Shown: positions 6,370-33,900 of the stretch, one piece after another
Layout: every line of letters starts with the position of its first letter
Position numbering within the stretch: the first letter of the stretch is position 1
Assembly (NCBI RefSeq): GCF_002113885.1
Contig: NW_018408310.1
Span: forward strand, 184,201-248,200
Direction of reading: 5' to 3'
Source: Mizuhopecten yessoensis
Lineage: Eukaryota
Length of the DNA: 64,000 nt
Program-made: the position numbers and the translations under genes
The notes under the pieces: generated by a model
Seen by the model: the letters and a program-made list of their open reading frames with translations, nothing else
Database searches by the model: none
What the model was told of the DNA's origin: nothing

Positions 6370-6434
6370 TGACACGTTATTTATATACCTCCATTTATGG
6401 ATGTAAATATAACTTTCAGCAGAACGAAACGAAG
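6370..6434 (+). promoter_or_regulatory. Putative core promoter and short non-coding first exon
   Basis: TATTTATA at 6378-6385 and a consensus donor GAAG|GTAAGT at 6434/6435, upstream of the leader exon at 6820-6885. Confidence 0.5.
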
Positions 6435-6834
6435 GTAAGTGCGTTGACTTTTCAAATAGAAAACAAACTTTAGAATTAAAATGTATTGTTTTATTGTTAA
6501 TTTTTACTTACTGTGCATGCTTTCTAATGTTTATAAAAGGCGTCCTTTGTAATCAGAAATAGAAATACAATGTGACTGTTTGCTTGCGTTTTAATTTGTA
6601 TACAGTTATGCATGTTTAAGCAACTAAAAAAAGCTTCATTATACAAATTACTATCTTATAAATGTTGATTTTCTTCTATTTGGAAACTATATGTTTAGGT
6701 ACAGTGGGTGTACAGGGCTTTCGCTTTGTTTAAAATGTTGCTGGTCGTTGGTATATTTGATTTGTTGGCGGTGATTAGTATTTCATCGGTTGTTAAAGAT
6801 ATTCCTTTCTTATTTTCAGATTCTTATAATTGAG

Positions 6835-6885
6835 ATGTTGACCGTAATTGCTGTACTCAGTTCTGTCCTCGCTTGCCATGCACAG
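6835..6885 (+). CDS. Orphan signal-peptide exon (MLTVIAVLSSVLACHAQ), probable leader of gene C
   Basis: Acceptor tattttcag|6820, ATG at 6835, 17 codons, donor CAG|GTAGGT, phase 0. Same coding length (51 nt, ending in Gln) as the leader exons of D and E. No DOMON exon found between 6885 and the gene A promoter. Confidence 0.7.
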
Positions 6886-7452
6886 GTAGGTGAATTTCTA
6901 ACGTAACTAACAAGAATCTTATAATATCACCTACAATGTCATTATGGATGGTTTTCTACATCTTACAGCGATCTGGTCAGTGATACATGTTATTATACCC
7001 ATTGCAATAAGAACCTAAACGTAAAAGGTTATAACATCGAAATTCAATAACTCTGTTCTGGAAGGACACCAGTCTATAAAAGGAGTACTACCAGTGTGCT
7101 TGCACAACTAGACAGATTAAATCAATGGGCAGTAACATAATCACAGAATATTAGTTATACCAAAGGAGATAGGACAACAAAAAACCGACTTCTTAGCAAC
7201 TGCATTATGGTTTTTGAGACCAGTGGCAAACCTTTTGCATCCACAGCGAAATAAGTGTAATGATTCTTTATTTCCGACTTTCAAAGATATCCCCTTGTAG
7301 TATTTTACATGCCCATACACTATTTATATAACATTGATATTCATTTAGTATTTTACATTTAAGATTGTTACAGGTTGGCAGCAAGATAATTGACTTGTAA
7401 ATGCATTTGTTCAGGTATTAATTGACTTTGTTCTAGCAATATTTCAGACAGG

Positions 7453-7953
7453 ACATCTAGCAAGGGTCCGAGATAAAGGTAGATTTACATCTAGCAAGGG
7501 TCCTAGATACAGGTAGATTTACATCTAGCAAGGGTCCCAGATACAGGTAGATTCACATCTAGCAAGGGTCCCAGATACAGGTATATTCACATCTAGCAAG
7601 GGTCCCAGATACAGGTATATTCCCATCTAGGAAGGGTCCCAGATACAGGTAGATTCACATATAGCAAGGGTCCCAGATACAGGTATATTTACATCTAGCA
7701 AGGGTCCCAGATACAGGTAGATTCACATCTAGCAAGGGTCCCAGAAACAGGTAGATTTACATCTAGCAAGGGTCCCAGATAAGGTAGATTTACATCTAGC
7801 AAGGGTCCCAGATACATGTAGATTCACATCTAGCAAGGTTCCCAGATACAGGTAGATTCACATCTAGCAAGGGTCCCAGATACAGGTAGATTTACATCTA
7901 GCAAGGGTCCCAGCTACAGGTAGATTAACTTCTAGCAAGCGTCCCAAAATACA
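7453..7953. repeat. 34-bp minisatellite, ~15 copies
   Basis: Unit ACATCTAGCAAGGGTCCCAGATACAGGTAGATTY, with starts at 7453, 7487, 7521, 7555 and onward. Confidence 0.95.
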
Positions 7954-8738
7954 TTGAAAGAATATATTATATTGTTCAAAAGAAGATTCAACCTATCAGA
8001 CAAACTCAAGAAATAGTTACTGATTTTAACTTTTTATTACGTGTCATGTAATGACTTATGATTTCAACCGTATAACAAGTACCAGGACATTGACCCCAGT
8101 AATACCTGTCATTACCGAAACTGTTACTTAATAGAAAGAAAAACAAATTTGAATTACGAAAAAAACTATCTGCAATCTGTTGACAAAGTGAAAACTTCGC
8201 CAACTGGTAACTTGGGTTTTTTATGAGATATGATATACTCATATTGGATTGATTCTTCTTTTTGTATAAAATACACCCCTTAACTGATTTCCTGACTGAC
8301 CCAGCTGCATTTTGCTTTTATTTGTCCCTATTCATTTAACCTGTTAAAATACTTTAAAGATGAAAATCAAAAATAGATATTCTCCAAACATCTTATATTA
8401 ACAGTGTGTAAAATCACTGAGGTTTCTATATGAACAACAGTATTTAAACAAAAGCTATTGAATCTATAAGGTCAAACATTTAAATTAACGAGAAATATAC
8501 ATATGGTAATATCTAAAATAGTACACCGGGGTTAAAGTATTGATAGGTTGATGGGTATTATCACTTCAGTATAAGGTAGATTGGGGAAGGTGTCTGTATG
8601 TTTACCGAAAATAGCAGGGTAAACTGAGATGTCCAATCAGTTTTCTTACTAATATGCGTTGAGAAAATTATGCTTAAATTGGGACGTTTACCTAGCATAC
8701 TCTGTCTTCATGTAAAAAGAGTGGTCAGTCTTAAATTT

Positions 8739-9082
8739 GGAGGCACGGTAGTCTAGTGGTAGGGCGCCGGGTTCGCGATCGAAGGTACGCGGGTTCGAGT
8801 CACGGCATGGCACTGTGTTGTATCTTTTAGCAAGATACTTTACTCCGCTTGTTCCAATCTACTCAGCTGTAAATGAGTACGTGGTTGGGCAGTGCTAGAA
8901 TTGTAGAATGCTAGCTGTGAGTGCCGAAATAGCAGTACCGGGGGGTTGAGAAAGATATTGGCTGGTTGCAAAGGCCCTATCACCACGGATAATAATATGT
9001 AAACCGCTTTGAGACGACCTACGAACTAGGTTGTGATAAAGCGGTATATAAGAACCTCTAAATATTATTATTATTATCATTA
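8739..9082 (+). mobile_element. Full-length tRNA-derived SINE
   Basis: A box TAGTCTAGTGG, B box GGTTCGAGTC, central ACTCAGCTGTAAATGAGTAC, (ATT)n tail. Partial copies at 18855-18985 and 48910-49091. Confidence 0.85.
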
Positions 9083-9889
9083 ATTACTGAGCCGGAACAT
9101 TCCTCTCAATATACCGACCTGGTCGGACAGCTGTGTATACATCCGTCTTAGTAAAGTGTTACAAACGATAGCCTCATAGACACCATTTGAGATAATAACG
9201 TCAGGTTAGTAGACAAAAACGTGATGTCAAATGAATACTCAGTTTAATTAGATACATGTTCTCACTTAATTTGTCCTTATGTACATACATCATTTCCTGG
9301 TGGGATGTTACTCTTATGTGTATGCAGAGACAGTTGATTGTTATACAGGGATAACTTAATGATGTCTTTATATAATGTCCCTTCAAAAAAAAAATCAAAG
9401 CAAAAGGCTATACGTTATGTTACTGGTAACTTTTGTAATTAAAAGATATTATATTTTCTTAAAGTGGTGTCAACGTGATAAGAAAAACTGAAAAGAAAAT
9501 GTGCATTTCATTAGCTATTCCTTTCCGAAAACATGCTACGCAAGTCTGCCTAAACCTCTAATAAATCTGCAACACTCATCCCGTCATTCTAGCATTATGT
9601 GTGTCTGTATGTGTGACATGCGTGATACCAAAAATCTATTATTTATCAATTAAATACACATAGTTTTAACATTTAATTATCAGAAATGCAGTAAATATTT
9701 TCAACTTAAAAACAAATGATTTCGACACCAAATAGACTCGAGACCTTTTCCAAACTAAATGCGTCGACTGGCAATATGCAAATCGTATGTAGCTTCAGTT
9801 AACTCTTGTATAAATTTAAAGATATTAAAAGTCAACAAAGTCTTCGAATATCTTCTAGTTTTTAAGTTGTATGCTAAAAGCATGTTTAT

Positions 9890-10033
9890 GATTGACGTTG
9901 GAAACGGAAATATGAACGGAAGTTTGTCTCACTTCGGAAGCTGCTTTTGTCATAACGGTATTTAAGTGTAGGCTGCTAATCTGTATAATGCAGTGTGTCA
10001 TATAGCAGCGAAGAGGAAACGTAAAAAGTAAAG
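9890..10033 (+). promoter_or_regulatory. Promoter and non-coding exon 1 of gene A
   Basis: Strongly conserved with 19558-19701. GGAA motifs, TATTTAAG at 9959, donor AAAG|GTAGGT at 10033. Confidence 0.65.
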
Positions 10034-10375
10034 GTAGGTATCATACATAAACTTCTAAACATTTATATTACGCTTGACATATTAGCAAAGGAATCTCACT
10101 TTAGAGATGCTTGTAAAGTGTTTTTAAACATTTTATTGTCATAATAAATTCAAAATCAAAACAGAATATCATTAATCTGAATATTGTACGGAGGTCGACT
10201 TTGAAACGCCCAATTTTTGACAAAGTACCTTGATTGGAAACGTTTCAGGAAGGCAGACAAATTAAATAATCATGGTAAGAGGAATGAAAACTATGAAGTA
10301 TGTGGATATATTTTTTACGGTAATACGATTAAACGAATTTGCCTGAAAAATTTAATAGTGAAACCTTTGTTGCAG

Positions 10376-13300
10376 ATGTTCCAAGCAACCATCATTGTCG
10401 CATTGACGTGTCTTCATCTATCGGTACGTATCAGATGTGTTGTTGTGTTAAAAATATTATATTAAGTCGATAAGTGGGCATCTTTATCATTATCAGGTTT
10501 TTGCTAAGGGGTGATTTTTTTCTGTCGAAGAAAACATTTTTCTCATGATTATCATATATAATATTAACAATATATAACAACAAAATATCAACGAAACTGA
10601 GTACAGTTATATTCATAACGAAATGCTGAGGCATAGACATAGCTTGAGCTGGTTAAAGTTTTGGTATTTTCTCCATCTCTTGAATGATATAATGTAGTTT
10701 AATCAGAAAAAAGGGAATTGTGATCTTTTCGAAAAGATTATAACGAAGGTCATTGCTCTCGTTTAATATGGCAAATATCCAATGATAAAACATGGATAAC
10801 ACACAGGAAGTCATCAACATGATATGCACGTATTTCCGCATACCGACATGCATTGCCATAGAAACCTAGTGTCTCATGTTGTTAATGTGAATACGATTCG
10901 GATAGTGTGGATATTTTGTCAATTTGTATTGACTAAACAATCGCGAAAGAAAACAGATACGGATAATATTACACTATAAAATGCAGAATTGAATATGCAA
11001 AAAGAAAATGCAAAATACAAAATACGATAAGAAAACGCCAATATTTGCATCTGCAGGCATATCCAATATGTTACCTGGTTCTAAGGACCACATAAGTAAC
11101 GTTATGACGAGGCGTCTGTTGTCCTTCATCTTTCTGTCTTCAGTCGTTCATTCGAGATTTCCATAATGATACGATTAGTGCTTAGTGCTTTTCATCATCA
11201 TACGATAAGCGCTTAGTGCTTTCCATCATGATACGATTAGTGTTTAGTGCTTTCCATCATGATACGATTAGTACTTAGTGCTTTCCATCATGATATGACT
11301 AGTGCTTAGTGCTTTCCATCATGATGCGATAAGCGCTTAGTGCTTTCCATCATGATACGATTAGCGCTTAGTGCTTTCCATCATTATACGATTAGTGCTT
11401 AGTGCTTTCCGTCATGATACGATAAGCGCTTAGTGCTTACATCATGATACGATTAGTGCTTAGTGTTTCCATCATGATACGATTAGCGCTTAGGGCTTTC
11501 CATCATGATACGATTAGTGCTTAGTGCTTTCCATCATGATACGATTAGTGCTTAGTGCTTTCCATCATGGTACGATTAGTGCTTAGTGCTTTCCATCATA
11601 ATACGATTAGTGCTTAGTGCTTTCCATTATGATTAGTGCTTAATTACACGTGGATCATCCCCTGGTGAAGGAAATTTAATGTTGAATAAGGAAACGTATG
11701 GCCGTCTGAAGAAGGGTAAAGAGGTGAACACTCCTGAGTGAATGATGTTTTCACCTATTCCGTCTTTGCGTATTGCAGAGTTATCTTCTCTTGGGAGTAG
11801 GTATTGATTGTTACGTCATTGGTTTGTGTGAGAAAATTACGTCGTTTTCTCAAAAATTGATTACGTTACTCTCACAAACAAGTGACGTAACAATCAATAC
11901 CTGCTCCCAAGAGCAGATAACTCTGCATTACGCAAAGACTGAATTAGGCATCGGGGATGCATTAAACAAGACATTGCTGGAAGTATAAATGAAAGGGATG
12001 TCTCTCTGAGGGCAATGGGATAGGACGTAAATAAATCCTTTAAAACATTTATCCTTTTAACAGAATTGATGATATTCTAATTGCAGTTGATTTTCGCCGT
12101 AATTACTCCCGACCCACAATGTGGAAGTACTAAGGGTTGCTACCCCCCGACCTGTCCCGTAGGTGGATGCAAAGATTTTCACCTTCGCTGGGAGGACGCT
12201 GCGGAATACATAAGGTTCAAGATGGTGGCTTCAGTTCCATCAACGGGGAACGTCTGGGCAGCTATAGGCTTCTCAAAGGACAACCAAATGGTAGGTCAGC
12301 TTAAGTAGATGGGAAAGGATCATATACAGAAAAGAAAAAGAAAAGAAGATTTTGTTTTGTTCTGTTTAACCGCAGAAAAATGCATCTTTATAGTAGTTCA
12401 TTGTTAATAACAGAACAGTGTCAATTTGATTTACAATTTTATGACATGAAATGCTATTAAAGTTGGAAATATGTATATGATAGCGTCTGCCTATTATGAT
12501 ATCTATAGTTATGTCTGTCTGTCTGTCTATGATAATGTCTGGCTATGGATTTGTTTGTCTATGATACAGTCTGTCTATGGTACAGTCTGGCTATGGTTTT
12601 GTCTGTCTATGGTACAGTCTGGCTATGGTTTTGTCTGTATCTGGTAATGTCTGGCTATGGTTTTGTCCGTATATGGTAATGTGTGGCTATGGTTATATCT
12701 TAGGTAACGTTTTTGTTTAGCCATTGTTTTTTCTGTCTATGGTACAGTCTGTCTAAGGTTATGTCTATCTTTTGGTTTGTCTGTCTAAGGTACAGACTGT
12801 CTAAGGATATGTCTATCTATTGGTTTGTCTGTCTATGGTACAGTCTCTCTAAGGTTATGTCTATCTTTTTCTTTGTCTGTCTATGGTACAGTCTGTCTAA
12901 TGTTATGTCTATCTTTTGGTTTGTCTGTCCATGGTACAGTTGGTCTAAGGTTATGTCTATCGTTTTGGTTTGTCTGTCTATGGTACAGTCTGTCTAAGGT
13001 TATGTCTTTCTATTGGTTTGTCTGTCTATGGTACACTCTGTCTAAGGTTATGTCTATCTATTGGGTTGTCTGTCTATGGTACAGTCTGTCTAATGTTATG
13101 TCTATCTTTTGGTTTGTCTGTCTAAGGTACAGACTGTCTAAGGATATGTCTATCTATTGGTTTGTCTGTCTATGGTACATTCGGTCTAAGGTTATGTCTA
13201 TCTTTTGGTTTGTCTGTCTATGGTACAGTCGGTCTAAGGGTATGTCTTTCTTTTGGTTTGTCTGTCTATGGGACAGTCTGTCTAAGGTTATGTCTATCTT

Positions 13301-16273
13301 TTTTGTTTGTCTGCCTATGGTACAGTCTGTCTAAGGTTATGTCTATCTTTTGGTTTGTCTGTCCATGGTACAGTCTGTCTAAGGTTATGTCTATCTTTTT
13401 GGTTTGTCTGTCTAAGGTACAGTCTGTACAATATTATGTCTATCTTTTGGTTTGTCTGACTATGGTACAGTCTGTCTAAGGTTTTGTCTTTCTTAGATGA
13501 CGCTTGTCTTATATTTTGTCTAATAGTGATTTTATATGTCTACGGTAATGTCTGTTGTGGTAACACCAGTCTAATATGTTTTCTATTGATGATATCGTTG
13601 AATATGGTAAGGTCTTTCTATGGTAATTTATATCTATGTTTATTTCTATCTATGACTATGTCTATCTATGGTTAGGTCTGTCTATGGTTATTTCTATCTA
13701 TGATTATGATATCTATGGTAAGGTGCGTCTATGGTTATTTCTATCTATGATTATGTATATCTATGGTTAGGTCTGTCTATGGTAAGGTCTGTCTATGTTT
13801 TTTTCTAAATATGGTAACGTCTTTCATAACAGCTTTATTTGGTTATCTTTCTGTAGAGTAGTGTCTGTCTATCATTGTCTGCCTAAGTTAAGTATACATA
13901 TGGTAACATTTCCAATATCTTTACACTTACAGAAAAACAGTAGTGTGGTGATGTGCAAAGTGGACCCGACGACAGTGGAGATAGGGTATACCGACCCACT
14001 CAAAAACTCCTATGCTGCCTTAAAGGTTTATACGTTAAGAACTTGTTGTATTACATTTCTACACAGATGTATCCACCTTATCAATTAGATATTTTCACTT
14101 TCTTGAGTTTTGAAAAGTAATGTTATCCAAAATGCATTGCATTGAACACTAACATAATTGGGAATATCTAATAGTTATGCATATTTGAATAAGTGATAGA
14201 TAGCAAAATAACGACAAGAAGAATGAGCAATTCAAAACAAGAAAAATGGAGTGCATCAGTCAAAATATGTACTTGGTTTTCTAAGATAAGGTTTTTTGCT
14301 TCAAGATTGTCGAAGCACTGACAATCACCGATAAACTTGAAGATGAAACAGGACAAGATTTGCTTTATGTGATATCACGGTTATGTTAGCTCTGTGCGAA
14401 TTTATCATAGAGTATGTACAGTAGGCGAACGAAGTTTTTATTCAATGAAAACAAAAGTGTCAAGAGAACAGTAATTCTAAGTCAAAATCGATGACATCAG
14501 GGCGAATTGAACCCGACATGTATTGATATGCTAAATGTATGCAATGAAAATATTTTCAAAGACTCGTGACAAAGAAACCACACGTCACCATTTTGATCAC
14601 AAATTCATCAAAATTCCTATTGCACAAGGAAACAGAATATTTCCAAATCAAATAATGACGGCGACCATAAAACCTGGCCTAAATCTCCTCAAGCTGTAGC
14701 TCTCGCACCCTGTTGTAAGTAGGTCAGTAAGCAATCGATAAATTACTATCAAGAATGAGAAAGTATGCGTTCGAAAATTATTCAGCAGTACTTAGAATGG
14801 TGGTGGTGCCTTACAATAATCAGTACCAAAAAGCTTATTTCTTGAAGTCGTGAAGTACTCAATCGAAAAGTCAATCCGAAACGGAAAGACACCAAATCAA
14901 AGGAAAGGCGAAACAAAAAAAGATACGCGTTTTTCTGCACCATATGTGTTAAAACCTTAAGTGAAACAAATCGGTCACTAGCAATCTAAGAAACTGTAAA
15001 TAATCATAATAGCCCCGGCCGTTACATAGTTAGAAGTAAGGCAATGGTTACGAGCGTAATATTTCCTCAGCAAAGGTTGATAGCCTCCACAGTAGAAAAA
15101 TGTGGCCATGTTGTCAATCTGTCATAAGGATACATTCATCCACAACATTATGATAATGAGGACAGGTCGAGTTATCTCCCATGTGGCGTACATCATAGAT
15201 GTCACCACATTTATATTCAGTTTCTGATTAGATAATCTGGTGAAAGGAAATGTGACATGCAAACCCAATGAGCTAGGGAGGCTGGTATTTTACTACTTAG
15301 AAAGAGCAAAAGGGGGGGGGGGGGGCATTCTGTTTTAAGCAAACGAAACGTACATTACGTCGCATATAAGTAGCAAACGAAACGTACCTTAACAACACTG
15401 TTTCAAAATGATCGGTGTTTGAAGAGAAGTTATCGACATTTGGCGCATATAAATAGCATAAATTGAAGTACATTTGTTGTTGCAGACTGTATCCACCCTA
15501 ACCAATGTGTCAGTAGCCCGTAACGGATCCTATATGACGTGTACATTCGCTCGGATCAAGAAACCAACGGAGTTCCCGACTCAGATATTTGCTCTAAACC
15601 AAACCGATCTATATCTTCTGAATGCACATGGACCACTTATAGGTGATAACTTATGAAGAGGAATTGATAAATAAATGCAAATTTAGAAACATCATATTTC
15701 AAATTTCTTTAGTTTAAACAAAACTTTTTAGTTTGAAATTTGACATTAATTTGTAAACACGAAATCGAGCTAGGAAACATATTTTTTTTATTTGATTCAT
15801 CGCCTAAAATGTGACATAAAAATTACTTGCTCGTGGTATGTTTTCTATTTTACTGGAGCTATATTAGTATTATTGAAAATCAAAAAAAAGTAATTTGTGA
15901 TTTTTATCAATTTAACTGGTTATATTGTCTCTGTTAATAATACTATGATTTTGTAATGGTGTCATTTCCAATCAAATGTTAATTAAAATAATGTCTGATG
16001 TTGATGCGTATGATATCTAATATACTTATTTATTTTTTATTTCAAGACGGCATACCTGGCTATCACAACGCAATCAGGCAAGCAAGCGCGAGCACCCTGT
16101 CGTTCGTAAATATGACCGACACTACTCCAATTTTGCCAACAACTGACGCCCCTCCTACCAGCACTCAGATGGCAACTCCTAGCACCACTCCTGCTAATAC
16201 TGCTACACCCCTGAAAATCACTATTTCGTCCATGTTCCTTACATGTTTGGCAGTGGTCGTCACACTCCTGTAA
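10376..16273 (+). CDS. Gene A: secreted single heme-DOMON protein with Thr/Pro stalk and GPI-signal-like tail (~242 aa)
   Basis: Exons 10376-10423, 12087-12290, 13933-14025, 15486-15642, 16047-16273, all GT-AG and in frame. Motifs CGSTKGC, WAAIGFSKDNQM (axial Met), SVVMC, CTFAR, LNAHG, GYH (axial His), hydrophobic C-terminus. Confidence 0.88.
11159..11642. repeat. 31-bp minisatellite, ~15 copies
   Basis: Unit TTCCATCATGATACGATTAGTGCTTAGTGCT in intron 2 of gene A. Confidence 0.95.
11756..11946. mobile_element. Palindromic MITE (~190 bp, long terminal inverted repeats), copy 1
   Basis: TATTCCGTCTTTGCGTATTGCAGAGTTATC... pairs with ...GATAACTCTGCATTACGCAAAGACTGAAT. Second copy in the opposite orientation at 16463-16654. 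Confidence 0.85.
12500..13800. repeat. Satellite of 16-bp monomers with a 48-bp higher-order unit (intron 3 of gene A)
   Basis: GGTACAGTCTGTCTAA-GGTTATGTCTATCTTT-TGGTTTGTCTGTCTAT, period 48 in 12741-13480, with degenerate 16-mers on either side. Confidence 0.92.
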
Positions 16274-16462
16274 AGAGAATAGAACTGGTTTCTATACAAA
16301 CAGCTTTTAAATCCAGTGTATCTTGGTCAAATTGAAACGTTTCATTAGTATAAAGTTATCTATAAATTCTAACGATGAAGTTCGTCAAATACCAAGGAAA
16401 AGATGTCTGGAGCAAAATAAGTCTTTCCTCTATTTCTGATTAAGAAATATAATGCATTTAAC

Positions 16463-16654
16463 TATTCCGTCTTTTTGTATTGCAGAGTTATCTGCTCTTG
16501 TGAGCAGGTATTGATTGTGACGTCATTTGTTTGTGAGAGGATAACGTCATCAAATTTTGAGAAAACGACGTAATTTTCTCATACAAACCAATGAGGTAAC
16601 AATCAATACCTGCTCACAAGAGAAGATAACTCTGCAATACGCAAAGACGAAATA
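16463..16654. mobile_element. Palindromic MITE, copy 2 (3' of the gene A stop)
   Basis: Near-identical reverse complement of 11756-11946, TA at both ends. Confidence 0.85.
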
Positions 16655-16761
16655 CAAAGTATTTTCTACTGTCATCTAGTACTCTTTCGCACAGTTTACA
16701 AAGCGTTGCTAGATAATACAATGTCTCGATACTGAGCATGAAAGACATGCAGTATGTTATT

Positions 16762-23000: not shown

Positions 23001-26000
23001 GTTACACTTGTCTATGGATATGTCATTATATGGTTACACTCGTTTATTGTAACGTCAATATATGGTAACACTTGTTTACTGTAACATCAATCTATGGTTA
23101 CACTTGTCTATTGATACGTCAATCTATGGTTACACTTGTCTATGGATATGTCAATAGATGGTTACACTCGTTTATTGTAACGTCAATATATGGGAACACT
23201 TGTTTACGGTAACATCAATCTATGGTTATACTTGTCTATGGATATGTCAATCTGTGGTTACACTTGTCTATGGATACGTCAATCTATGGTCACACTTGTC
23301 TATGGATATGTCAATATATGGTTACACTCGTTGATTGTAACGTCAATATATGGTAACACTTGTTTACGGTAACATCAATCTATGGTTATACTTGTCTATG
23401 GATATGTCAATCTGTGGTTACACTTGTCTATGGATACGTCAATATATGGTTACACTTGTCTATGGATACGTCAATCTATGGTTACACTTGTCTATGGATA
23501 TGTCAATATATGGTTACACTCGTTTATTGTAACGTCAATATATGGTAACACTTGTTTACGGTAACATCAATCTATGGTTACACTTGTCTATGGATACGTC
23601 AATCTATGGTAACACCTGTCTATGGTAAACATCTTTCTTTGATAATGCATGTCTATGGTAACGTCTTTATATGGAAACATTTGTCTATAGTTACGTCTAT
23701 CTATGATAACGCATGTTTATGGTTACCTGTCCATATGGTAACATATATCTGTTTTAACGTCTTCCTATGGTAATGCATGTCTATAATTACGTCTACCTAT
23801 ATGATTACACCTTTCGATGGTTACGTCTTTCTATGGTAACAACTGTCAGTGGTAACGTCTATATATGGTAACGCATGTTTATGGTAACGTCTATATATGG
23901 TAACGCATGCTTACAGTAACGTCTATATATGGTAACGCCTGTCTATGATTACGTCTATCTATGGTAACGCCTGTCTCTAGTGACGTCTATTTATTGTAAC
24001 GCCTGCCAATGATTGCATCTATCTATAATGAGGTTTGCTTATGATCGCGTCTATCTGTGGTAACGCCTGTCTATGATAATGTCTATCTGTGGACACGCCT
24101 GTCTATGATAATGTCTATCTGTGGTAACGCCTGTCTATGATAATGTCTATCTATGGTAACGCCTGTCTATGCTTACGTCTATCTGTGGTAACGCCTGTCT
24201 ATAGTGACGTTTATCTATAGTAACGCCTGTCTCTAGTGACGTCTATTTATTGTAACGTCTACCAATGATTGCATCTATCTATAATAACGTTTGTTTATGA
24301 TCGCGTCTATCTGTGGTAACGCCTGTCTATAGTGACGTTTATCTATAGTAACGCCTGTCTCTAGTGACGTCTATTTATTGTAACGTCTTCCAATGATTGC
24401 ATCTTTCTATAATAACGTTTGCTTATGATCGCGTCTGTCTGTGGTAACGCCTGTCTATGATAATGTCTATCTATGGTAACGCCTGTCTATGATTACGTCT
24501 ATCTATGGTAACGCCTGTCTATAGTGACGTCTATCTATGGTAAAGCCTTCTAAAGTGACGTCTATCTATGATTGCGTCTATCTACGGTAACGCCTGTCTA
24601 TAGTGAAGTCTATATATTGTAACGCCTGTCTATGATTACGTTTATCTATGGTAACGCCTGTCTATGGTTACGTCTATCTATGATTACGTCTATCTATGGT
24701 AACGCCTGTCTATAGTGAAGTCTATATATTGTAACGCCTGTCTATGATTACGTCTATCTATGGTAACGCCTATCTATAGTGACATCTATCTATGATTGCG
24801 TCTATCTATGGTAACGCCTATCTATAGTGACGTTTATCTATGGTAACGCCTGTCTATAGTGACGTCTATATATTGTAACGCCTGTCTATGATTACGTCTA
24901 TCTATGGTAACGCCTATCTATAGTGACNTATTGTAACGCCTGCCAATGATTACATCTATCTATAATAACGCTTGTTTATGATTACGTCTATCTATGGTAA
25001 CGCCTGTCTATGATAATGTCTATCTGTGGTAACGCCTGTCTATGATAATGTCTATCTATGGTAACGCCTGTCTATGATTACGTCTATCTATGGTAACGCC
25101 TGTCTATGATTACGTCTATCTATGGTAACGCCTGTCTATAGTGACGTCTATATATTGTAACGCCTGCCAATGATTGCATCTATCTATAATAACGTTTGTC
25201 TATGATTGCGTATATCTATGGTTACATCTGTGTATGGTTACAAGTGTGTATGAAACTTCTATCTACTCTTACAACTGTGTATGGTTACTTCTATCTATGG
25301 TTACATCTGTGTATGGGTACTTTTATCTATGGTTACAACTGTGTATGGCTACTTCTATGGTTACAATTGTGTATGGTTACTTCTATCTATGGTTACAACT
25401 GTGTATGGTTACTACTACATGTATCTATGGTTACAACTGTGTATGGTAACTTCTATCTATGGTTACATATGTGAATGTTTACTTCTATTTATGGTTACAA
25501 CTGTTTATGGTTACTTCTTTCTATGGTTACTTCTTTATATGGCTACTTCTATCTATGGTTAAAACTGTGTATGGTTACTTCTATCTGTGGTTACATCTGT
25601 GTATGGTTACTTCTAATTGTGGTAACACATGTCGATGATTACGTCATATGTGGTAATGCTTGTGCCTTTTGAAGGTTTTTTCTGCACATGGTTGTCTTTG
25701 ATTCGTATTTCTATGGCAACATATTTTTTATACTCGTAGAGAGACACCAGTGTGGTAATGTGCAAATCGGACACGATGACAGCCGAAATAGGGCATAATG
25801 ATCCTTCACGATTCTTCTATGCTCCTTTAAGGGTATGTGCTTCAAGAACTGTTTATCATATACTGTACTGAATATGAAAAGTGATGATAATCTTTGAATC
25901 TTTTAAGCTCTTTAATTAAGTAATTTTATTACTTTAAATTTTTTAGAGAAGATCTGATTGATTCCAAATTACATTATGATTATAGTGGTTTATTAAGAAA

Positions 26001-27692
26001 CCATATTGTCCCGTCAGTTAAGCATGAGGTAAAGGGGAAAGTCCAAAGTTCTGATAAAAGAGGCTTTCTTTAGGAAAAGGTGTTTAAGATCGATCATAGG
26101 ATATTTTAAGCAACTGTTAATAAGTATTGATCCAATAAAACCCTGGTCATTTAATAGTCAAAATTCAGGCAATGATTACGATCGTTATATTTTATTAGCA
26201 AAGATTCAAACTTCTCTCGGAAAAAGTCCATGCCAATATCATATCGGTCACAAGGACAAATAGTATAGCAATCACAAGGACAAATATTATATTGGTCACA
26301 AGGACAAATAGTATATCGGTCACAAGGACAAATAGTATATCGGTCACAAGGACAAATAGTATATCGGTCACAAGGTCAAATATTACATCGGTCACAATGC
26401 CAAATATTATTTCGGTCACAAGGACAAATAGTATACGGTCACAAGAACAAATAGTCTATCGGTCACAAGGACAAATAGTATATCGGTCACGATGACAAAT
26501 AGTATCTCGGTCACAAGGACAAATCTATATATAACTTACTGTTTTGTAAAACATGCAATAATGACGTAAATGAACTGAAACATGTTTACTCGACTAGCAA
26601 GGGAGGACGGCAAGTAATTCCAGAGATAATAGAAAAATGTGGTCAACACTCTTCTCAGCAAACATGAGCGTATGACGGTGAAACCTTTCAAAATAATCTT
26701 TGTCCGACAAGAAGCCATCGATGTTTCTGACGTTTGTGCAATGTACCTATTTAAACTAATTTTTACTTGTCTTCTTTTTTGCAGACTGTATCAAGCCTAC
26801 AGGATGTGTCTGTTTCCCGAACCGTAATGTATATGACGTGTATGTTCTCCCGAATTAAGATACCAAGGGAATTCCCAGCACATATATTTGCCTTAAACCG
26901 ACCCGACCTATATCTTCTGAATGCTCGTGGCCCGATTGCCAAAGGTAAATTTTAAGTAAAAACGAATAGATAGATATTTCAGATATATCTAATTTAAGGA
27001 AAACTTAAAAAAAACTAGTTTACTAATATATATCAATATAAGTAAACACATTGTATTGCATTCTGCATGATTTATATTTGTAATTGTAATTAGTTACCCT
27101 AAAAAGTCATAGAAATTGAAAAAAATACTTGAAGTTATAAGTTTATTGTATTTTAAAAAGAAATTGTTTTTTTTGCAAGGTAATTTGTAATCTAATTAAT
27201 TATATTGTCATGTAATTGAACTCATGACTTGTTATGATAATGTGCGATTCTTACGTAGTTATTCTTCATTTTGTAGGAGGCATGCCTAATCCCCACACAA
27301 GCAGACAAGCAAGCGCGAGCCCTGTGTCATTCATGATTATAGGCCAGGAGGATACCACTACCACTACAACCACCAGAAGTCGTTCTACCACTAACACTAC
27401 CACTACCACTACCACCACTAGAAGTCGCACTACCACTGCAACTACCATAATTGCGTCACCAACTACCAAAGATTCTACTATCACTACCTCCTCTGCGTCA
27501 CCAACCACTAAACTCCCCCCTTCCACCTCTATCGACACACCTGCCAACACCCCTACCAGCACTTCTATCTCAACCCGTCGCATTTCTCCTACGGCCGAGC
27601 CCGTCAGCACTGCTATGCCAATCATAAATACTGTTTCGTCAATGATGCTGACATGTTTGTCAGTTGTCGTTGTACTAATTTTGATGACATAG
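20077..27692 (+). CDS. Gene B: secreted single heme-DOMON protein with long mucin-like stalk and GPI-signal-like tail (~306 aa)
   Basis: Exons 20077-20124, 21923-22126, 25740-25832, 26785-26944, 27277-27692, with the same phases as gene A. WAAIGFSKDNRM, SVVMC, CMFSR, LNARG, NPH, Thr-rich stalk, hydrophobic C-terminus. Confidence 0.88.
22330..25650. repeat. Compound satellite of 16-bp monomers in 32-bp dimers, three blocks (intron 3 of gene B)
   Basis: TATGGTTACACTTGTC/TATGGATACGTCAATC (~22480-23620), TATGGTAACGCCTGTC/TATGATTACGTCTATC (~23620-25200), TATGGTTACAACTGTG/TATGGTTACTTCTATC (~25200-25620). N at 24928, so the true length is uncertain. Confidence 0.93.
26240..26525. repeat. 24-bp minisatellite, ~12 copies
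   Basis: Unit TCGGTCACAAGGACAAATAGTATA in intron 4 of gene B. Confidence 0.93.
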
Positions 27693-28766
27693 AACGGGTT
27701 TAAATTCAGGTTTAACGCCTAAATGTTACCAAACAACATGTTGTTTCATTGTGTATTGTGTTCCATGGAAACGAATCCTAATTTAGGTTATTCCATAAAT
27801 CAAAAACCTCGATCTATGAAATTCAACAAACACACAGGAAAAAGCCGTGAACACCGGTTTGTCAGGTGGTTTCAATATGCAGTTTTCCCCTATCTCTCTC
27901 TGATACAGATTGTAATACAGGTATACAGATGTAAGTCAATGCTCTTTCACAAAATTTACACAAAGTTGTGAGATAGGACCTGCAGATACATTATTTTAAA
28001 TACTCGCATTTTTAAATGTTCGTTTCCGCTTCTCTGTGATTTTACGAAACTGCGCTCAGAGGTTACCAAATGCGATGTTGACCTGCAACTCCTTAACAAT
28101 TACGCGAAAAGACGCAATACAATCCGTTGTTGATCTCCACTAAAATAGTAACAGGGGATCATGTCTATGGCGAATCATATTTTGACCAATCAGAAAACAA
28201 AACTGGCAATCACCGAGTAGTAAACAATGACAGGCAGCAATACGCAGACGTCCGATTATCGGGAGGCATTACGATTCCCTCGAATAGATCATAATTACCC
28301 GATTCTAAATTCCCTTAATGCCATCGAATTTGCCTAAAACTTTATCCAGAAAACGTAGCAGAGAGAGGCCAACTAACAAAAACAAAGTCTTGACATAGGT
28401 TAACACGAGAACTTGCTGGCCATCGATATATGACATTTGTTGGTTTCATTGAATATTGCCTTTCTTGGGCAAACGAATACCGTTTTTAACCTAAAAACGG
28501 CCACAATTGTGTTATGTTAAAAAGACTTGTTAGATTTCGTACAAATAAAATATATATATCAAATATACTCATGTACAGATTAACAAATTAATGTAAGACA
28601 ACAGGAAACCACATCATGGTACATAAACAGATAATAGACATCATTCAATGATTTATTTAGCATTTCTATGTGAAAAAGATAATTTTTCAGTTATTATACT
28701 TGTATTCATGTTTTATTTGTATACGTATACACTGATGAGCAGTTCCATGATGTTTTGAAACGCCTA

Positions 28767-29357
28767 ACGTCACTGTACCTAAATCGGGACACTTTTTAGA
28801 TAAATATCGATGTTCTTTTAACCGTACTATCAGTTCCAAAAATATTTGTTCATTTTTCATATATAGATATGCTATCCACTTTTCATTTCTATTACAAGTT
28901 GATATTTCGGGCGCGTGGTTCTATAAATAAAACGCGAAGTACCAACAGGGTTACGTATACGTATGCCATTTATTTGGGGATACACGATCAATATTAGCAG
29001 AAAAGAAGACATATTTAAAAAGAGTTTAGATTCAAACAGGGTCATGATTAAATTTCTTCTCCAAACTAGCAGTAGTTTTGATAAAATAGACTTTGGAATT
29101 GATTTCCAAATAAATAGCGTCGCACGACACGTAAATCGGGAAGGTTTTGTTTTGGTCATTATTCTTACCTTTAAATTGTCCATTTAACGATAATCAGCAA
29201 CCAATAAAGCTTACATACAGTTAAATTGTCATAAAAGTGTTATGGAATGAAAACTATATGCATAAAAGTACTTCTTTGAATTGAATGATAGTTCCTTGGG
29301 CCGTTTTCCCATAAGTGACCCGTTTTGGTAACTGTGCCGATTTGGGTACAGTGACGG
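28767..29357. mobile_element. TA-flanked MITE (Tc1/mariner/pogo-type), ~590 bp
   Basis: TA|ACGTCACTGTACCTAAATCGGGACACTT ... AACTGTGCCGATTTGGGTACAGTGACGG|TA. Related TIRs at 62707-63099. Confidence 0.8.
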
Positions 29358-30120
29358 TAAGATTCTAACCCAGAAAGGACGTAAGGTTGGCAGGGATACC
29401 TGGTAAATGTATGTGTATAGGGTTCTAGGTTTTAGCATGAAATGACAGCACCATAAGTCTGTAGTTATTTTTTTATTTTTGTTACTGGTGTTGTATTTCT
29501 ATATGGAAATTTTAGAAAGGGACATTGGAGCGTTGTCTATCTTTTGAATAGAGAAAAACTGCCGAAAATCACAGGAGCCAATATTCATGTTACTATCTAT
29601 TCTCTCTTGTTAAAATATTTCATTCTTTTGTAGGTGAATTATTTAGTCATTAGATTCTATTGATGTTACTTACTAATTGAAATAAACAACATTAAATATT
29701 TCGCAAATTGTTGAATTTATTATTTGGTACTAAGATAATATAAGAAATACACTTCTATTGGCATCAAAAATTGCAAATATTGTATGTGTTTCACTATTTC
29801 CTATTTTCGATTAACAGCAAATATTCATTTGCGTAATATGCTGCACGGTGATATTAAGCGAAATTTACGTTAACATGATAAATACTGCTTCACTAGTCAA
29901 TGCTAAGTAAATTTGGAGCTCTTTCGAATACGATTCAAGCTTGTTTTATCGTATCTGTGACATTGAAACTATTACATGTATACACATTTCCCCTTATTCA
30001 GTTACTCTTTGTGAGGTTGAGCAATGGGCGAATTCAACAAAGGTCGAACCCCAATAAAAAGGCAGGACATTTTGAACTCATAAGATATAACATATTATAT
30101 AAAATCATATTTTTGGAGTA

Positions 30121-30211
30121 TGCATTAAGGTCATGGTCCATGCGCATTAAGATCATGGTCCAAGTGCATTAAGATCATGGTCCAGGTGCATTAAGGTCAT
30201 GGTCCAGGTCA
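30121..30211. repeat. 22-bp tandem repeat, ~4 copies
   Basis: TGCATTAAGRTCATGGTCCAnG repeated. Confidence 0.85.
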
Positions 30212-30964
30212 TCAATCAAGTGATTCATATAAGGTAATAAAAACCCGTCTCATTCTTGTTATTGTAAAAGATATGATGGTAATATTTAGTTTTTCAAAGT
30301 TTAAACAAACGCACCACGGCGTCAACTAGCAAAAACAAAATAGGAAGTCTAAATAAATTTGAAAGGAAACCAGTATGGAACAGAGAAAGAATCATACAAA
30401 ACTAAAGGAAAGATAGCATACAACCGGTTAAATAGTTTTAAAAACAAAGCACACACAACTATCAAAAACATAATGATACTAACAAGCACTGTGGTAGTGA
30501 ACTTACTGTGACATGTATTAGTATACGTCCCATATGTTGATAGGTTTGTGCGAACAAAATTGAAGACGTTCTGTTCGGTGTATAGTGACCTTTCTTGTCA
30601 TACTTTGGGTATCATGTTTAGAAGCAAAAAAAGTGGAATCTATGCCGCCTTGATTCAAGATCTGAGGAAATCATGAGACGCAAATTCTTATAAAAAGTTT
30701 TGTTATTCACGGACGAAACAGCATCTTTATAAGATAAGTTGAGATTAATTCTCTAAAAGCCCAATTATCTTAGTTTTATTACAGTGCAAATACAGATAGG
30801 CCCCAACTGGAAGCATCATCATAATCTACCAAAATAAACAAATAAACGGTATTCAACCGAGTTAAACCTTGTTGACAAACACGGAGACAGACAAAGAGCT
30901 CAGTTTAGACAAGACATTTTAAATGTGTTAGGATATATTGTATTTGCCTCTGTTGCTTGTTCAG

Positions 30965-33900
30965 ACAGGGATATCGGCAGACCCAGCTTGTGACGTCACG
31001 AAGGGATGTTTTTCGGACTGTTCTGGCTCTCTGTGTTCCTTCCTGGTGACATGGAGACCTGTCAACAATGGACAAATCGTGTTTGAAATAACATCCGCAG
31101 TATCTGCGCCCAACAGCTGGGCCGCCATTGGATTTTCTGGAGATAGATCAATGGTAATTTTATTTACCATATAATTTTTCACTTTTTAAATTGGGCTAGG
31201 TCTTTTTGTGATGTTATTATATCGAAAAGGATTTAACGACACATTTAGAAAATTTAAAACTGATTCAGGTTTAGACAATACGCTTAAAAAAAAATCTTCA
31301 TTGTGAAAACAAAACATCTTAAACTTAATGTATTATAAATGAGAACGTACAATCTCGATAAAATCGTAACACTCATATGAATTATTTTTTAGATAATACG
31401 CACGCGTATAAGAGGGATCAGACAGTGTTAACGCCTGTGTGAGTCCTGGTGTAGTAATTGTGTATTGTATAACAGGGATCAGACAGTGTTATCGCCTGTG
31501 TGGGTTCCAGCGGACTATTTGTGTATTGTATTACAGGGATCAAACAGTGTTGTTGCCTGTGTGAGTTCCGGTGGAGTAATTGTGTATTGTATTACAAGGA
31601 TCAGACATTGTTGTTATCTGTGTGAGTTCCGATGGAGTAATTGTGTATTGTATTACAGGGATCAGACAGCGTTGTCACCTGTGTGAGTTTCGGTGTAGTA
31701 ATTGTGTATTGTATAACAAGGATCAGACAGTGTTGTCACCTGTGTGAGTTCGGGTGTAGTAATTGTGTATTGTATAACAGGGATCAGACAGTGTTATCGC
31801 CTGTGTGGGTTCCGGCGGACTATTTGTGTATTGTATTACAGGGATCAGACAGCGTTGTCACCTGTGTGAGTTTCGGTGTAGTAATTGTGTATTGTATAAC
31901 AGGGATCAGACAGTGTTATCGCCTGTGTGGGTTCCGGCGGACTATTTGTGTATTGTATTACAGGGATCAGACAGTGTTGTTGCCTGTGTGAGTTCCGGTG
32001 GAGTAATTGTGTATTGTATTACAAGGCTCAGACAGTGTTGTTACCTGTGTTGAGTTCCGGTGGAGTAATTGTGTATTGTATTACAGGGATCAGATAGCGT
32101 TGTTATCTGTGTGAGCTCCGTTGGAGTAATTGTGTATTGTATTACAGGGATCAGACAGTGTTGTTATCTGTGTGAGTTCCGGTGGAGTAATTGTGTATTG
32201 TATTACAGGGATCAGACAGTGTTGTTGCCAGTGTGAGTTCCGGTGGAGTAATTGTGTATTGTATTACAAGGATCAGACAGTGTTGTTACCTGTGTGAGTT
32301 CTGGTGCAGTGGTTGTGTATTGTATTACAGGGATCAGACAGTGTTGTTATCTGTATGAGTTCCGGTGGAGTAATTGTGTATTGTTTTACAGGGATCAGAC
32401 AGTGTTGTTATCTTTGTGAGTTCCGGTGGAGTAACTGTGTACTTTAGTATAGGGATCAGACAGTGTTGTTACCTGGTTGAGTTCCGGTGGAGTAATTGTG
32501 TATTGCATTACAGGGATCAGACAGTGTTGTTATCTGTGTGAGTTCCGGTGGAGTAACTGTGTATTGTATTACAGGGATCAGACAGTGTTATTGTCGGTGT
32601 GAGTTCCGGGTAGAAATTGTGTATTGTATTACAGGGATCAGACAGCGTCGTTATCTGTGTGAGTTCAGGTGCAGTAATTGTGTATTGTATTACAGGGATC
32701 AGACAGTGTTGTTATCTGTGTGAGTTCAGGTGCAGTAATTGTGTATTGCATTACAGGGATCAGACAGTGTTATTGTCGGTGGGAGTTCCGGGTAGAAATT
32801 GTGTATTGTATTACAGGGATCAGTCAGCGTCGTTATCTGTGTGAGTTCCGGTGGAGTAATTGTGTATTGTATTACAGGGATCAGACTGTCGTGTTGCCTG
32901 TGTGAGTTCTGGTGTAGTAATTTTGTATTGTATTACAGGGATCAGACAGTGTTGTTGCCTGTGTGAGTTCCGGTGGAGTAATTGCTGCTGAATCTGGTTA
33001 TACTGACGGTCGATCATACAGATCCCTTTCTAATGTAGGTAACAAAACTTCTTAAATAACGTTTAAGCATGCAGTTTCATTGTTTAAAAAATAAAATAGC
33101 ATGTGTGCCCTCATTTTATTGGAAAAATACGGGGAGTGGAAGATCCAACGTCCAAAAGTACGGGGAGTGGCAGATCCAACGTCCAAAAATACGGGGAGTG
33201 GCAGATCCAACATCCGTGCAAAGAGTCCAGCGAAGTTCTGTGTTACTCAGCAGACGGATTCCACAAGGAATACATGAGTCAGACTGTAAAGAGTAAAGTA
33301 ATCAAAAGGAAAAGATGACCATGACAAGGAAACTAGTCAACGTCAAATTTGGTTAAAGCCGTTATACCTTGCACGACATTTTCATTGTTATTTTTTTCCT
33401 TTTGATTATTTGAAAAGTATTTCGGAATTTTAAAATACAATGAATATATATATTCTACTACGATACTCGCGTCGGCTTTAGTATGTACCTAGGACAAAGT
33501 GACGTATATCATCAATTCAATTTAATTGTGTATATTTTTTTCGATTTGAATTTTTTTTCCACGTGAAACGTCGTTATCATTCCATTGATAAACTGATGTT
33601 ACAACTGATATCGTAATTTCTAGACGTCGTTCAGCCAATAGTCTTGGTATTCCTGTTTGAGGATCCCCGTACTACTGGAACATCTGTATAAAAACCTTTT
33701 AACCAGCGTGAAAACAGAAGAACCGTTTCTGAAAATAAAACAGAACCATTCCTTGCGGTAAAAATAATGAAGATGAAAAAAAAAAAAAACGGAAAATCAA
33801 CAACAGTGCTTTGAGAGTAAATATGTAACAATCCCAGTCCGGGGTTGAAACCCTCGACCTCCGATAGCATTACAATCGTTTTTACAAGCTGAGCTACCTG

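What the first reader, a model, noticed from the sequence alone, without database searches (positions are those of the whole stretch)
6370..30965. Two same-strand paralogues apparently nested inside a 24-kb intron of the b561 gene
Seen: a promoter, non-coding exon and signal exon at 6370-6885 with no DOMON body of their own. Gene C has a body at 30965 but I found no convincing leader in 27.7-30.9 kb. The phase-0 join gives MLTVIAVLSSVLACHA-QTGISADPACDVTKGC, a clean signal peptide. A and B have their own promoters and leaders, and their next exon completes the signal peptide (LIFA, LTCA), so the orphan fits C best. Same-strand nesting is rare because the transcript must skip about 12 exons and two 3' ends.
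Basis: partly seen in the sequence, partly recalled or inferred. Interest (0 to 1): 0.75.

Follow-up and report, generated by a model that had tools for sequence, protein, structure and literature searches.

The report
Two genes nested in scallop intron
In the Yesso scallop, a ferric-reductase-like gene (DOMON domain plus cytochrome b561) splices its signal-peptide exon across a 24-kb intron that holds two complete, same-strand, five-coding-exon relatives of itself; RNA confirms the join, but this is an uncommon example of a known arrangement, not a new mechanism.

Summary

**The join.** Spliced contigs from four public runs, each from a different study, cover gene C's first DOMON exon (30965-31153). 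All four continue upstream into the same 30 letters. Those letters match window 6853-6882, the end of the orphan signal exon (ATG at 6835, donor CAG|GTAGGT after 6885), and nowhere else. Gene C therefore uses a 24,079-nt phase-0 intron (6886-30964). No leader inside 27.7-31 kb is used in these runs, and the alternative acceptor at 30969 is not used.

**What lies in the intron.** Genes A (242 aa) and B (306 aa) sit on the same strand.
- Both have intact reading frames and canonical splice sites, apart from one GC donor in B.
- Each has its own conserved TATA-like box, non-coding exon and 16-codon leader.
- They show purifying selection against each other (omega 0.33, dS 0.69).
- RefSeq models them as separate proteins: XP_021366794.1 (A) and XP_021366793.1 (B).

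**Not tested.** I could not check whether A and B are transcribed, or whether the 6835 exon ever joins them.

**Added context.** The neighbouring inverted paralogue C' carries an A-type DOMON inside its own reading frame, at the position where A and B lie as separate genes here.

**Verdict.** This is a new member of a known kind (same-strand nested genes), unusual because the guests are multi-exon paralogues of the host. The scan's other notes on this locus gave a species lead and a rival reading.

The parts
6378..6387 (+). TATA-like box of host gene C
   Evidence: Read in the sequence. The longest contig's 5' reach fits a start near 6409. Inferred.
6409..6434 (+). Putative non-coding exon 0 of gene C, donor AAG|GTAAGT after 6434
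   Evidence: The contigs carry 9-26 more letters 5' of the 66-nt signal exon (tables 7 and 8). Those letters were not shown, so a splice 6434>6820 is inferred and not proven.
6820..6885 (+). Signal-peptide exon of gene C (ATG at 6835, 17 codons, donor CAG|GTAGGT)
   Evidence: Its last 30 letters before the shared CAG are the loose end of the exon-2 contigs in four runs.
6886..30964 (+). Intron of gene C, 24,079 nt, phase 0, holding genes A and B
   Evidence: Junction 6885|30965 in contigs of X1, X2, X6 and X11.
9960..10033 (+). Gene A: TATA-like box and putative non-coding exon 0 (donor AAAG|GTAGGT after 10033)
   Evidence: A block 88% identical between A and B that ends at the donor. Inferred.
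10376..10423 (+). Gene A leader exon (16 codons); the acceptor lies directly before the ATG
   Evidence: Identical to residues 1-16 of XP_021366794.1.
12087..16273 (+). Gene A body: exons 12087-12290, 13933-14025, 15486-15642, 16047-16273 (stop included). DOMON, Thr/Pro-rich stalk, hydrophobic GPI-type tail. First AATAAA at 16904.
   Evidence: The exons match P0003 at 100%. DOMON 54.4 bits.
19628..19701 (+). Gene B: TATA-like box and putative non-coding exon 0 with a GC donor (GAAG|GCAAGT)
   Evidence: Inferred.
20077..20124 (+). Gene B leader exon (16 codons)
   Evidence: Identical to residues 1-16 of XP_021366793.1.
21923..27692 (+). Gene B body: exons 21923-22126, 25740-25832, 26785-26944, 27277-27692 (stop included). 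First AATAAA at 28544.
   Evidence: The exons match P0005 at 100%. DOMON 35.2 bits. No contig of the four C-expressing runs lies on 26785-27692.
30965..31153 (+). Gene C exon 2, first DOMON exon
   Evidence: Pfam DOMON profile positions 3-42, E 1.9e-5.
32939..38698 (+). Rest of gene C: exons at about 32939-33034, 34352-34505, 35411-35524, 35915-36030, 36140-36226, 36730-36816, 37919-38018, 38514-38698. Second half of DOMON plus cytochrome b561 membrane domain.
   Evidence: Colinear with the Ylistrum balloti ferric-chelate reductase 1-like protein P0004, which passes Pfam DOMON and Cytochrom_B561. The loose end behind 31154 matches the last unit of the minisatellite, at 32940.

Best explanation
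Gene C encodes a secreted-pathway DOMON plus cytochrome b561 protein of about 392 residues (ferric-chelate-reductase-1-like). It is transcribed from a promoter near 6.4 kb.

Its signal peptide is encoded almost wholly by a small exon at 6820-6885. That exon is spliced in phase 0 across 24,079 nt to the first DOMON exon at 30965. This step is shown.

Inside the intron lie two tandemly duplicated genes, A and B, on the same strand. Each has five coding exons and encodes a DOMON-only protein that is probably GPI-anchored. Each has its own TATA-like box, non-coding exon, leader exon, stop codon and poly(A) signals. The gene models are shown; that they are transcribed independently is inferred.

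When C is transcribed, the polymerase must read through both guests, and the 6885 donor must pass over their splice sites and 3' ends. I infer three contributing factors:
- Acceptor strength. The first acceptors the donor meets (A at 12087, B at 21923) have poor polypyrimidine tracts (10 of 20 pyrimidines). C's acceptor has 15 of 20.
- Terminal exons. A's and B's terminal exons have no in-frame donor, so they cannot act as internal exons. Their poly(A) sites are used poorly unless the terminal exon is defined by splicing. Intronic poly(A) sites are also generally suppressed by U1 snRNP (established knowledge).
- Expression pattern. Host and guests are probably active in different tissues, as is usual for nested pairs.

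In evolutionary terms, A and B belong to the DOMON subtype that forms the N-terminal domain of the neighbouring two-DOMON paralogue C'. The locus therefore looks like the split state of an architecture that is fused next door.
For: Junction:
- four runs from four studies give an identical 30-nt loose end before 30962, with no mismatches over exon 2.
- those 30 letters are unique, at 6853-6882.
- there is no second copy or retrocopy of the leader or of exon 2 in the genome.
- most of the intronic stretch has zero depth and the contigs skip the next intron too, so the material is spliced RNA.

A and B as intact genes:
- splice sites, frames and stop codons are in order.
- the exons match XP_021366794.1 and XP_021366793.1 at 100%.
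- both pass the DOMON cut-off.
- omega 0.33 (bootstrap 0.20-0.51) over 151 codons, dS 0.69.
- a conserved promoter and exon-0 block.
- P0007, a 1278-nt Logan contig, encodes a complete A-type protein with its own 16-residue leader, so this type exists as an independent mRNA in some relative.

Other points:
- acceptor strengths.
- no in-frame donor in the terminal exons of A or B.
- no contigs on B's last two exons in the C-expressing runs.
- the structure of C'.
Against:
- Logan contigs drop rare isoforms, so minor forms (6885>12087, 6885>21923, or cassette inclusion of the phase 0-0 exons of A and B) cannot be excluded.
- Only 30 letters of the upstream part of each contig were shown.
- The runs are labelled 'RNA?' by guess. 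Their RNA nature is inferred from the splicing.
- The explanation for exon skipping rests on consensus counts, not on measurement.
- The E2-only tree separates A-type from C-type DOMONs weakly (76/91).
Confidence: 0.85

Rival explanations
1. Shared-leader locus, as in the cholinergic gene locus. The promoter near 6.4 kb and the 6835 exon serve all three bodies, and the donor at 6885 (or the exon-0 donor at 6434) chooses among acceptors at 12087 / 10376, 21923 / 20077 and 30965.
For: All three exon-2 acceptors are in phase 0, so each join would be in frame. The leader exons of A and B begin with an acceptor directly before the ATG, so they are internal exons that an upstream donor could reach.
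Against: A and B carry their own conserved TATA-like box, exon 0 and donor. The RefSeq models use the genes' own leaders. All four contigs join 6885 to 30965, and none lies on B's exons. Gene A's exons were not in the stretch laid.
Confidence: 0.08
2. Variable-DOMON, constant-b561 gene of the UGT1 / protocadherin kind, as in the scan's note s1-512529. The DOMON exons of A, B and C would be alternative 5' cassettes, each with its own promoter, spliced to the common exons from about 35.4 kb.
For: Intron phases are conserved among the paralogues. A's and B's exon 4 end in phase 1, as does C's exon 4, so a join to C's exon 5 would be in frame. The paralogue C' shows that A-type and C-type DOMONs can share one mRNA.
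Against: A and B end in their own terminal exons, with a GPI-type tail, a stop codon and poly(A) signals. Those exons are conserved between A and B and in the Logan transcript P0007. RefSeq models them as separate proteins. No B exon appears in four C-expressing runs.
Confidence: 0.05
3. A and B are dead or silent copies, so this is a long intron with decaying duplicates and not a nest of working genes.
For: No RNA evidence for A or B was obtained here. B's exon-0 donor is GC rather than GT. B's last exons are absent from four runs.
Against: Both reading frames and all coding splice sites are intact after dS 0.69 of divergence, with omega 0.33. The leader's length, ATG and donor are conserved in a flank that is only 66% identical.
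Confidence: 0.07
4. Artefact: the contigs are assembly chimeras, or come from a processed copy elsewhere in the genome.
For: Logan contigs are automatic assemblies, and only 30 letters of the upstream part were shown.
Against: The same junction appears at a GT-AG pair in four runs from four studies. The leader and exon 2 each occur once in the 988-Mb assembly.
Confidence: 0.01

Closest known systems
Same-strand host/nested gene pairs in animals (Drosophila: Lee & Chang 2013, PMC3814207; Assis 2016, PMC5174743; mouse and human: PMC11694760)
   Same: The guest genes lie wholly inside one long 5' intron of the host, on the host's strand. The guests are duplicates, which are over-represented among nested genes. 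Complex nests with several guests are already described.
   Different: In Drosophila, 72.5% of same-strand guests are single-exon, and the rest have a median of one intron. Here each guest has four coding introns and probably a fifth in the 5' UTR. The guests are also paralogues of the host, and they sit in the intron that separates the host's signal peptide from its mature protein.
Cholinergic gene locus: VAChT inside the first intron of ChAT, same orientation (PMC3053374 and its reference, Eiden 1998)
   Same: A same-strand guest in the host's 5' intron. The host transcript must read through the guest and splice over it. The arrangement is long-lived.
   Different: VAChT is a single exon, is unrelated in sequence to ChAT, and shares 5' exons and promoters with it. 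Here the guests are multi-exon paralogues with promoters of their own by inference, and sharing of the leader was neither seen nor tested.
Two-DOMON ferric-chelate reductase 1-like gene C' (contig C4983:252791-267419, minus strand; orthologue XP_060069676.1 of Ylistrum balloti, P0004)
   Same: The same order of modules on one strand: leader, A-type DOMON, C-type DOMON, b561. It lies in the same gene cluster, and C's exons 2-10 are colinear with it at about 42-81% identity per exon.
   Different: In C' the A-type unit ends in a short internal exon with a phase-0 donor (CCG|GTGAGC) and is read into the same protein. In C the A-type units end in GPI-type terminal exons with stop codons and are skipped.
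UGT1A / clustered protocadherin variable-constant loci (from general knowledge)
   Same: A tandem array of paralogous 5' units, each with a promoter, upstream of one set of downstream exons on the same strand.
   Different: In those loci each variable exon is spliced to the constant exons. Here the only join observed goes from the most upstream leader directly to C's own DOMON exon, and the intervening units are complete genes.

Membership tests
Host/nested gene pair, same strand | The guest lies entirely within one intron of the host, as defined by the host's real mRNA | tested here: met
   Junction 6885|30965 in contigs of four runs. All exons of A (9960-16273) and B (19628-27692) lie between those two points.
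Host/nested gene pair, same strand | [quoted passage not shown] | tested here: met
   All reading frames and GT-AG sites of A, B and C are on the + strand.
Host/nested gene pair, same strand | The guest is an independent transcription unit with its own promoter, start and 3' end | tested here: inconclusive
   Supported by conserved TATA-like boxes, exon 0 and leaders, by stop codons and AATAAA signals, and by separate RefSeq proteins. No RNA was laid on A or on B's 5' part.
DOMON domain proteins (PF03351) | Match to the Pfam DOMON profile above the gathering score | tested here: met
   A 54.4 bits and B 35.2 bits against a cut-off of 32.7. For C, exon 2 matches profile positions 3-42 (25.3 bits) and exon 4 matches 81-124 (22.6 bits). 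C was searched exon by exon only.
Eukaryotic cytochrome b561 (PF03188) / ferric-chelate reductase 1-like | Match to the b561 profile | tested here: inconclusive
   C's single exons give no Pfam hit. Exons 6-9 are colinear with residues 394-522 of P0004 at 46-81% identity, and P0004 scores 31.4 bits against a cut-off of 23. The Atlas lead for exon 6 was PF03188 at 0.82, which is weak. The joined protein was not searched.
Cholinergic-locus type (shared 5' exon) | Host and guest mRNAs share a 5' exon | not tested
UGT1 / protocadherin-like variable-constant gene | Each upstream unit is spliced to common downstream exons | tested here: not met
   In four C-expressing runs no contig lies on B's exons 4-5, and exon 2 is joined to the 6835 leader only. 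A and B have their own terminal exons and stop codons. Other tissues were not tested.

The most novel reading that the evidence does not exclude
C and its inverted neighbour C' are two states of one ancestral architecture: leader, A-type DOMON, C-type DOMON, b561. In C' the A-type unit is an in-frame part of the host protein. In C it has become, or has remained, free-standing GPI-anchored genes that the host transcript skips. If so, a same-strand nest would be the intermediate through which a domain is gained or shed by a gene. The locus might also still produce minor shared-leader or two-DOMON isoforms in some tissues.
Probability: 0.25. Interest if true: 0.6.

Novelty: new member of a known kind. 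Interest (0 to 1): 0.4.

Why it matters
Same-strand guests with introns are thought to be selected against because their splice sites can corrupt the host's mRNA. Here a host has tolerated ten coding exons, two probable non-coding exons and two 3' ends of its own paralogues for a long time (dS about 0.7 between the guests). They sit inside the one intron that must be removed correctly for the protein to enter the secretory pathway.

With the fused paralogue C' 43 kb away, the locus offers a natural comparison for two questions. The first is how splice-site strength, terminal-exon definition and tissue-specific promoters keep nested units apart. The second is how domains move between genes. For annotators, it shows that a 5' exon with no gene body next to it can belong to a gene three genes downstream. 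It does not reveal a new mechanism.

Tried and rejected
- **Word search.** The search for homologous proteins with C's exon 2 found nothing because of its length window.
- **RefSeq gene map.** I did not pursue this further.
- I repeated the work by coordinates.
- **Read laying.** The first attempt returned a machine error. The retry succeeded.
- **Pfam on C's b561 exons.** Searched one exon at a time, none reached a hit. I relied instead on colinearity with P0004.
- **Paralogous copy of the orphan leader.** blastn found none in the window or the genome.
- **Relics.** No relic of a DOMON body lies behind the orphan leader, and no relic of a leader lies before C's exon 2.
- **Internal donors.** A search for in-frame donors in A's and B's terminal exons, which would allow an A-C or B-C fusion as in C', found none.
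- **Tree.** An exon-2-only tree could not resolve whether A and B are the closest relatives of the N-terminal DOMON of C'.
- **Joined model.** I neither built nor searched a joined spliced model of C. All searches were exon by exon, by reference.
- **N positions.** The two single-N positions (24928, 50471) were left as they are.
Full report
**Setting.** The window is contig C4983:184201-248200 of a 988-Mb assembly. GC content is about 34%. Two more (D, E) lie on the minus strand, and further DOMON units lie outside the window.

**The observation.**
- A good acceptor (ttcttattttcag|) precedes 6820.
- The ATG is at 6835, followed by 17 codons of a typical signal peptide.
- The donor CAG|GTAGGT follows 6885. 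It was the best donor among all ATG + hydrophobic + phase-0-donor candidates between 5 and 31 kb.
- About 385 nt upstream there is a consensus donor AAG|GTAAGT after 6434, and a TATA-like box at 6378-6387.
- Nothing resembling a DOMON exon follows before gene A (tblastn with all exon peptides).
- The 650-nt leader region has no copy elsewhere in the window or the genome.

Gene C's first DOMON exon begins at 30965, behind a pyrimidine-rich acceptor, in phase 0. The 3.3 kb before it holds no credible leader and no relic of one. A and B have paralogous 16-codon leaders at 10376-10423 and 20077-20124. Both use the donor TCG|GTACGT, 1.7-1.8 kb before their first DOMON exons.

**The decisive test.** Twenty public runs hold all sampled words of C's exon 2, and fourteen of them are labelled as probable RNA. 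I laid four of these, from four studies, on 26530-31400 (after a machine error).
- Each run has one long contig (630-1770 nt) that matches 30962-31154 without a mismatch and then leaves the stretch on both sides.
- Downstream, each continues with the start of exon 3, at the last unit of the intron's minisatellite.
- Upstream, all four continue with the same 30 letters, which occur exactly once in the window, at 6853-6882.
- The three letters CAG end the leader exon and also end the intron, which is why the aligner stops at 30962. Only the placement 6885|30965 has GT-AG ends.
- The contigs contain 30965-30968, so the alternative acceptor at 30969 is not used.
- Most of the stretch has no depth, and the contigs skip two introns, so this is spliced RNA.
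- A processed copy in DNA is unlikely, because leader and exon 2 each occur once in the assembly.

The contigs reach 72-89 nt beyond 30962. That is 9-26 nt more than the signal exon can supply. If spliced at 6434, the longest contig starts at 6409, about 25-30 nt after the TATA-like box.

**The guests.** By coordinates and reading frames:
- Gene A consists of 10376-10423, 12087-12290, 13933-14025, 15486-15642 and 16047-16273, giving 242 codons.
- Gene B consists of 20077-20124, 21923-22126, 25740-25832, 26785-26944 and 27277-27692, giving 306 codons.

All coding splice sites are canonical, and the two genes share intron phases. A HMMER search of 1.8 billion representatives with A's exon 2 returned two proteins identical to these models exon by exon. 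They are XP_021366794.1 (uncharacterized LOC110459067) and XP_021366793.1 (named 'cell wall protein DAN4-like', evidently because of its Thr-rich stalk). Both pass Pfam DOMON. Both end in a Ser/Thr/Pro-rich stalk and a short hydrophobic tail, which I read as a GPI-anchor signal; that is inference.

A and B are tandem duplicates of a unit of about 10 kb that begins at least 1.4 kb before the leader. Over the 151 DOMON codons, dS is 0.69 and omega is 0.33 (bootstrap 0.20-0.51), so the duplicates are old and constrained.

About 340-370 nt before each leader there is a block more conserved than the coding exons. It holds a TATA-like box, then about 40 nt, then a donor (GT in A, GC in B), and the conservation stops at the donor. 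The leader exons begin with an acceptor directly at the ATG. Each guest therefore has the same 5' architecture as C: promoter, tiny non-coding exon, short intron, signal exon.

A 1278-nt Logan contig from an unnamed source encodes a complete A-type protein with its own 16-residue leader (P0007). Proteins of this type therefore exist as separate mRNAs somewhere. I could not test transcription of A and B themselves. B's last two exons, which lay in my stretch, carry no contig in the four C-expressing runs.

**Gene C.** Its exons 2 and 4 match the two ends of the DOMON profile. Its later exons give no Pfam hit one at a time. They are, however, colinear with the Ylistrum balloti 'ferric-chelate reductase 1-like' protein P0004, with exon 6 at 81% and exon 9 at 64% identity. 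P0004 passes both DOMON (twice) and Cytochrom_B561. I did not build or search a joined model of C. From the exon lengths, the protein should have about 392 residues.

**How it probably works.** The join itself is shown. The rest of this section is inference.
- The first acceptors that the 6885 donor meets (12087, 21923) have poor pyrimidine tracts, 10 of 20, against 15 of 20 for 30965.
- The terminal exons of A and B contain no usable in-frame donor. They cannot be taken up as internal exons, and their poly(A) sites would depend on definition of a terminal exon that the host transcript does not splice to.
- From established knowledge, intronic poly(A) sites are in general held down by U1 snRNP.
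- Nested pairs usually differ in tissue expression, attributed to transcriptional interference (PMC5174743).
- The phase 0-0 exons 2 and 3 of A and B could in principle be included in frame. This is not seen in the contigs, but contigs drop rare forms.

**Context in the cluster.** P0004 has an A-type DOMON in front of its C-type DOMON. Its scallop counterpart C' lies 43 kb away on the opposite strand (contig 252791-261314, with a candidate leader at 267372-267419) and is colinear with P0004 throughout. There the A-type unit ends in a short exon with a strong phase-0 donor, which joins the C-type DOMON exon in frame.

An exon-2 tree places A, B, D, E and the N-terminal DOMON of C' on one side, and C, the second DOMON of C' and the upstream array on the other. 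Support is weak (76/91). The order 'A-type unit, then C-type unit with b561, on one strand' therefore occurs twice in the cluster, once fused and once as host plus guests. Which state is ancestral cannot be decided here.

**Comparison with what is known.**
- Nested genes are common: about 10% of Drosophila genes, and over a tenth of mammalian genes sit in host/nested pairs.
- In Drosophila 71% of nested genes are on the opposite strand. Same-strand guests are mostly single-exon (72.5%), with a median of one intron otherwise. This is read as selection against mis-splicing (PMC3814207; confirmed in PMC5174743).
- In mouse and human the two orientations are nearly balanced, and guests prefer long 5' introns (PMC11694760).
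- The best-known same-strand case, VAChT inside ChAT, has a single-exon guest that shares 5' exons with its host (PMC3053374).

The scallop locus is a clear member of this kind. It lies at the unusual end: two guests with four coding introns each, both paralogues of the host, in the signal-peptide intron. RefSeq already models A and B as separate genes. I could not see its model of C.

**Rivals.** Three other readings were considered:
- a shared leader;
- UGT1-like variable-constant splicing (the scan's note s1-512529);
- dead guests.

The contigs, the guests' own 5' and 3' ends and the selection signal each argue against these. None is fully excluded, because A and B were not examined at the RNA level.

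**Verdict.** Observation confirmed and interpretation supported. This is a new member of a known kind, of moderate interest.

Noticed in passing
outside the window: G000:C4983:252791-267419, minus strand (L012, L014): Paralogue C' is a two-DOMON plus b561 gene, colinear with Ylistrum balloti XP_060069676.1. Its A-type DOMON unit ends in a short exon (259311-259198) with a phase-0 donor and is joined in frame to the C-type DOMON exon (258788-258591).
   Followed up: partly
window 52001-52072 and 53306-53464 (+); wider 36.6-46.2 kb versus 52-59.8 kb: A partial second copy of C's exons 8 and 10 (87% and 77% identical at protein level). It lies inside a segmental duplication that also made the minus-strand DOMON genes D (exon at 45970-46176) and E (59582-59788). 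No copy of exon 9 was found, so it is probably a gene fragment.
   Followed up: partly
window 12520-13815, 22478-25615, 31406-32984: All three + strand paralogues carry a large minisatellite in the same intron, between DOMON exons 2 and 3. Those of A and B are homologous to each other. C's is the acceptor-copy array already reported as s1-512440.
   Followed up: no
window 19696-19707: B's putative non-coding exon has a GC donor (GAAG|GCAAGT), where A has GT (AAAG|GTAGGT). This may be a GC-AG intron or a weakened promoter-proximal splice.
   Followed up: no
window 11742-11944 and 16449-16654; also 16759-16924: Copies of a roughly 200-nt element with inverted-repeat structure (80-92% identical in both orientations). 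They lie in A's leader intron and just after A's 3' end, and look MITE-like.
   Followed up: no
window 8941-9071 versus 18852-18982: A 131-nt block 92% identical between the A and B units, well above the coding exons (79%). It overlaps similar minus-strand reading frames. It may be a repeat element or a converted tract.
   Followed up: no
window 3623-4819 (-): A single-exon reading frame of 399 codons with a weak rhodopsin-type 7TM match (19.4 bits, below the cut-off). Its 5' end faces gene C's promoter about 1.6 kb away.
   Followed up: partly
window 28770-29230: Short contigs, some at high depth (up to 746), at 95-97% identity in the RNA runs, one with a 136-nt skip and 68 other letters. They look like transcripts of a dispersed repeat, not of this locus.
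   Followed up: no
outside the window: G000:C4983:169368-182971, minus strand (L013, L015): Seven tandem DOMON exon-2 units on one strand, two of them identical in protein. Pecten maximus has a 1568-residue protein with seven DOMON matches (P0001), so this may be one multi-DOMON gene and not seven genes.
   Followed up: no
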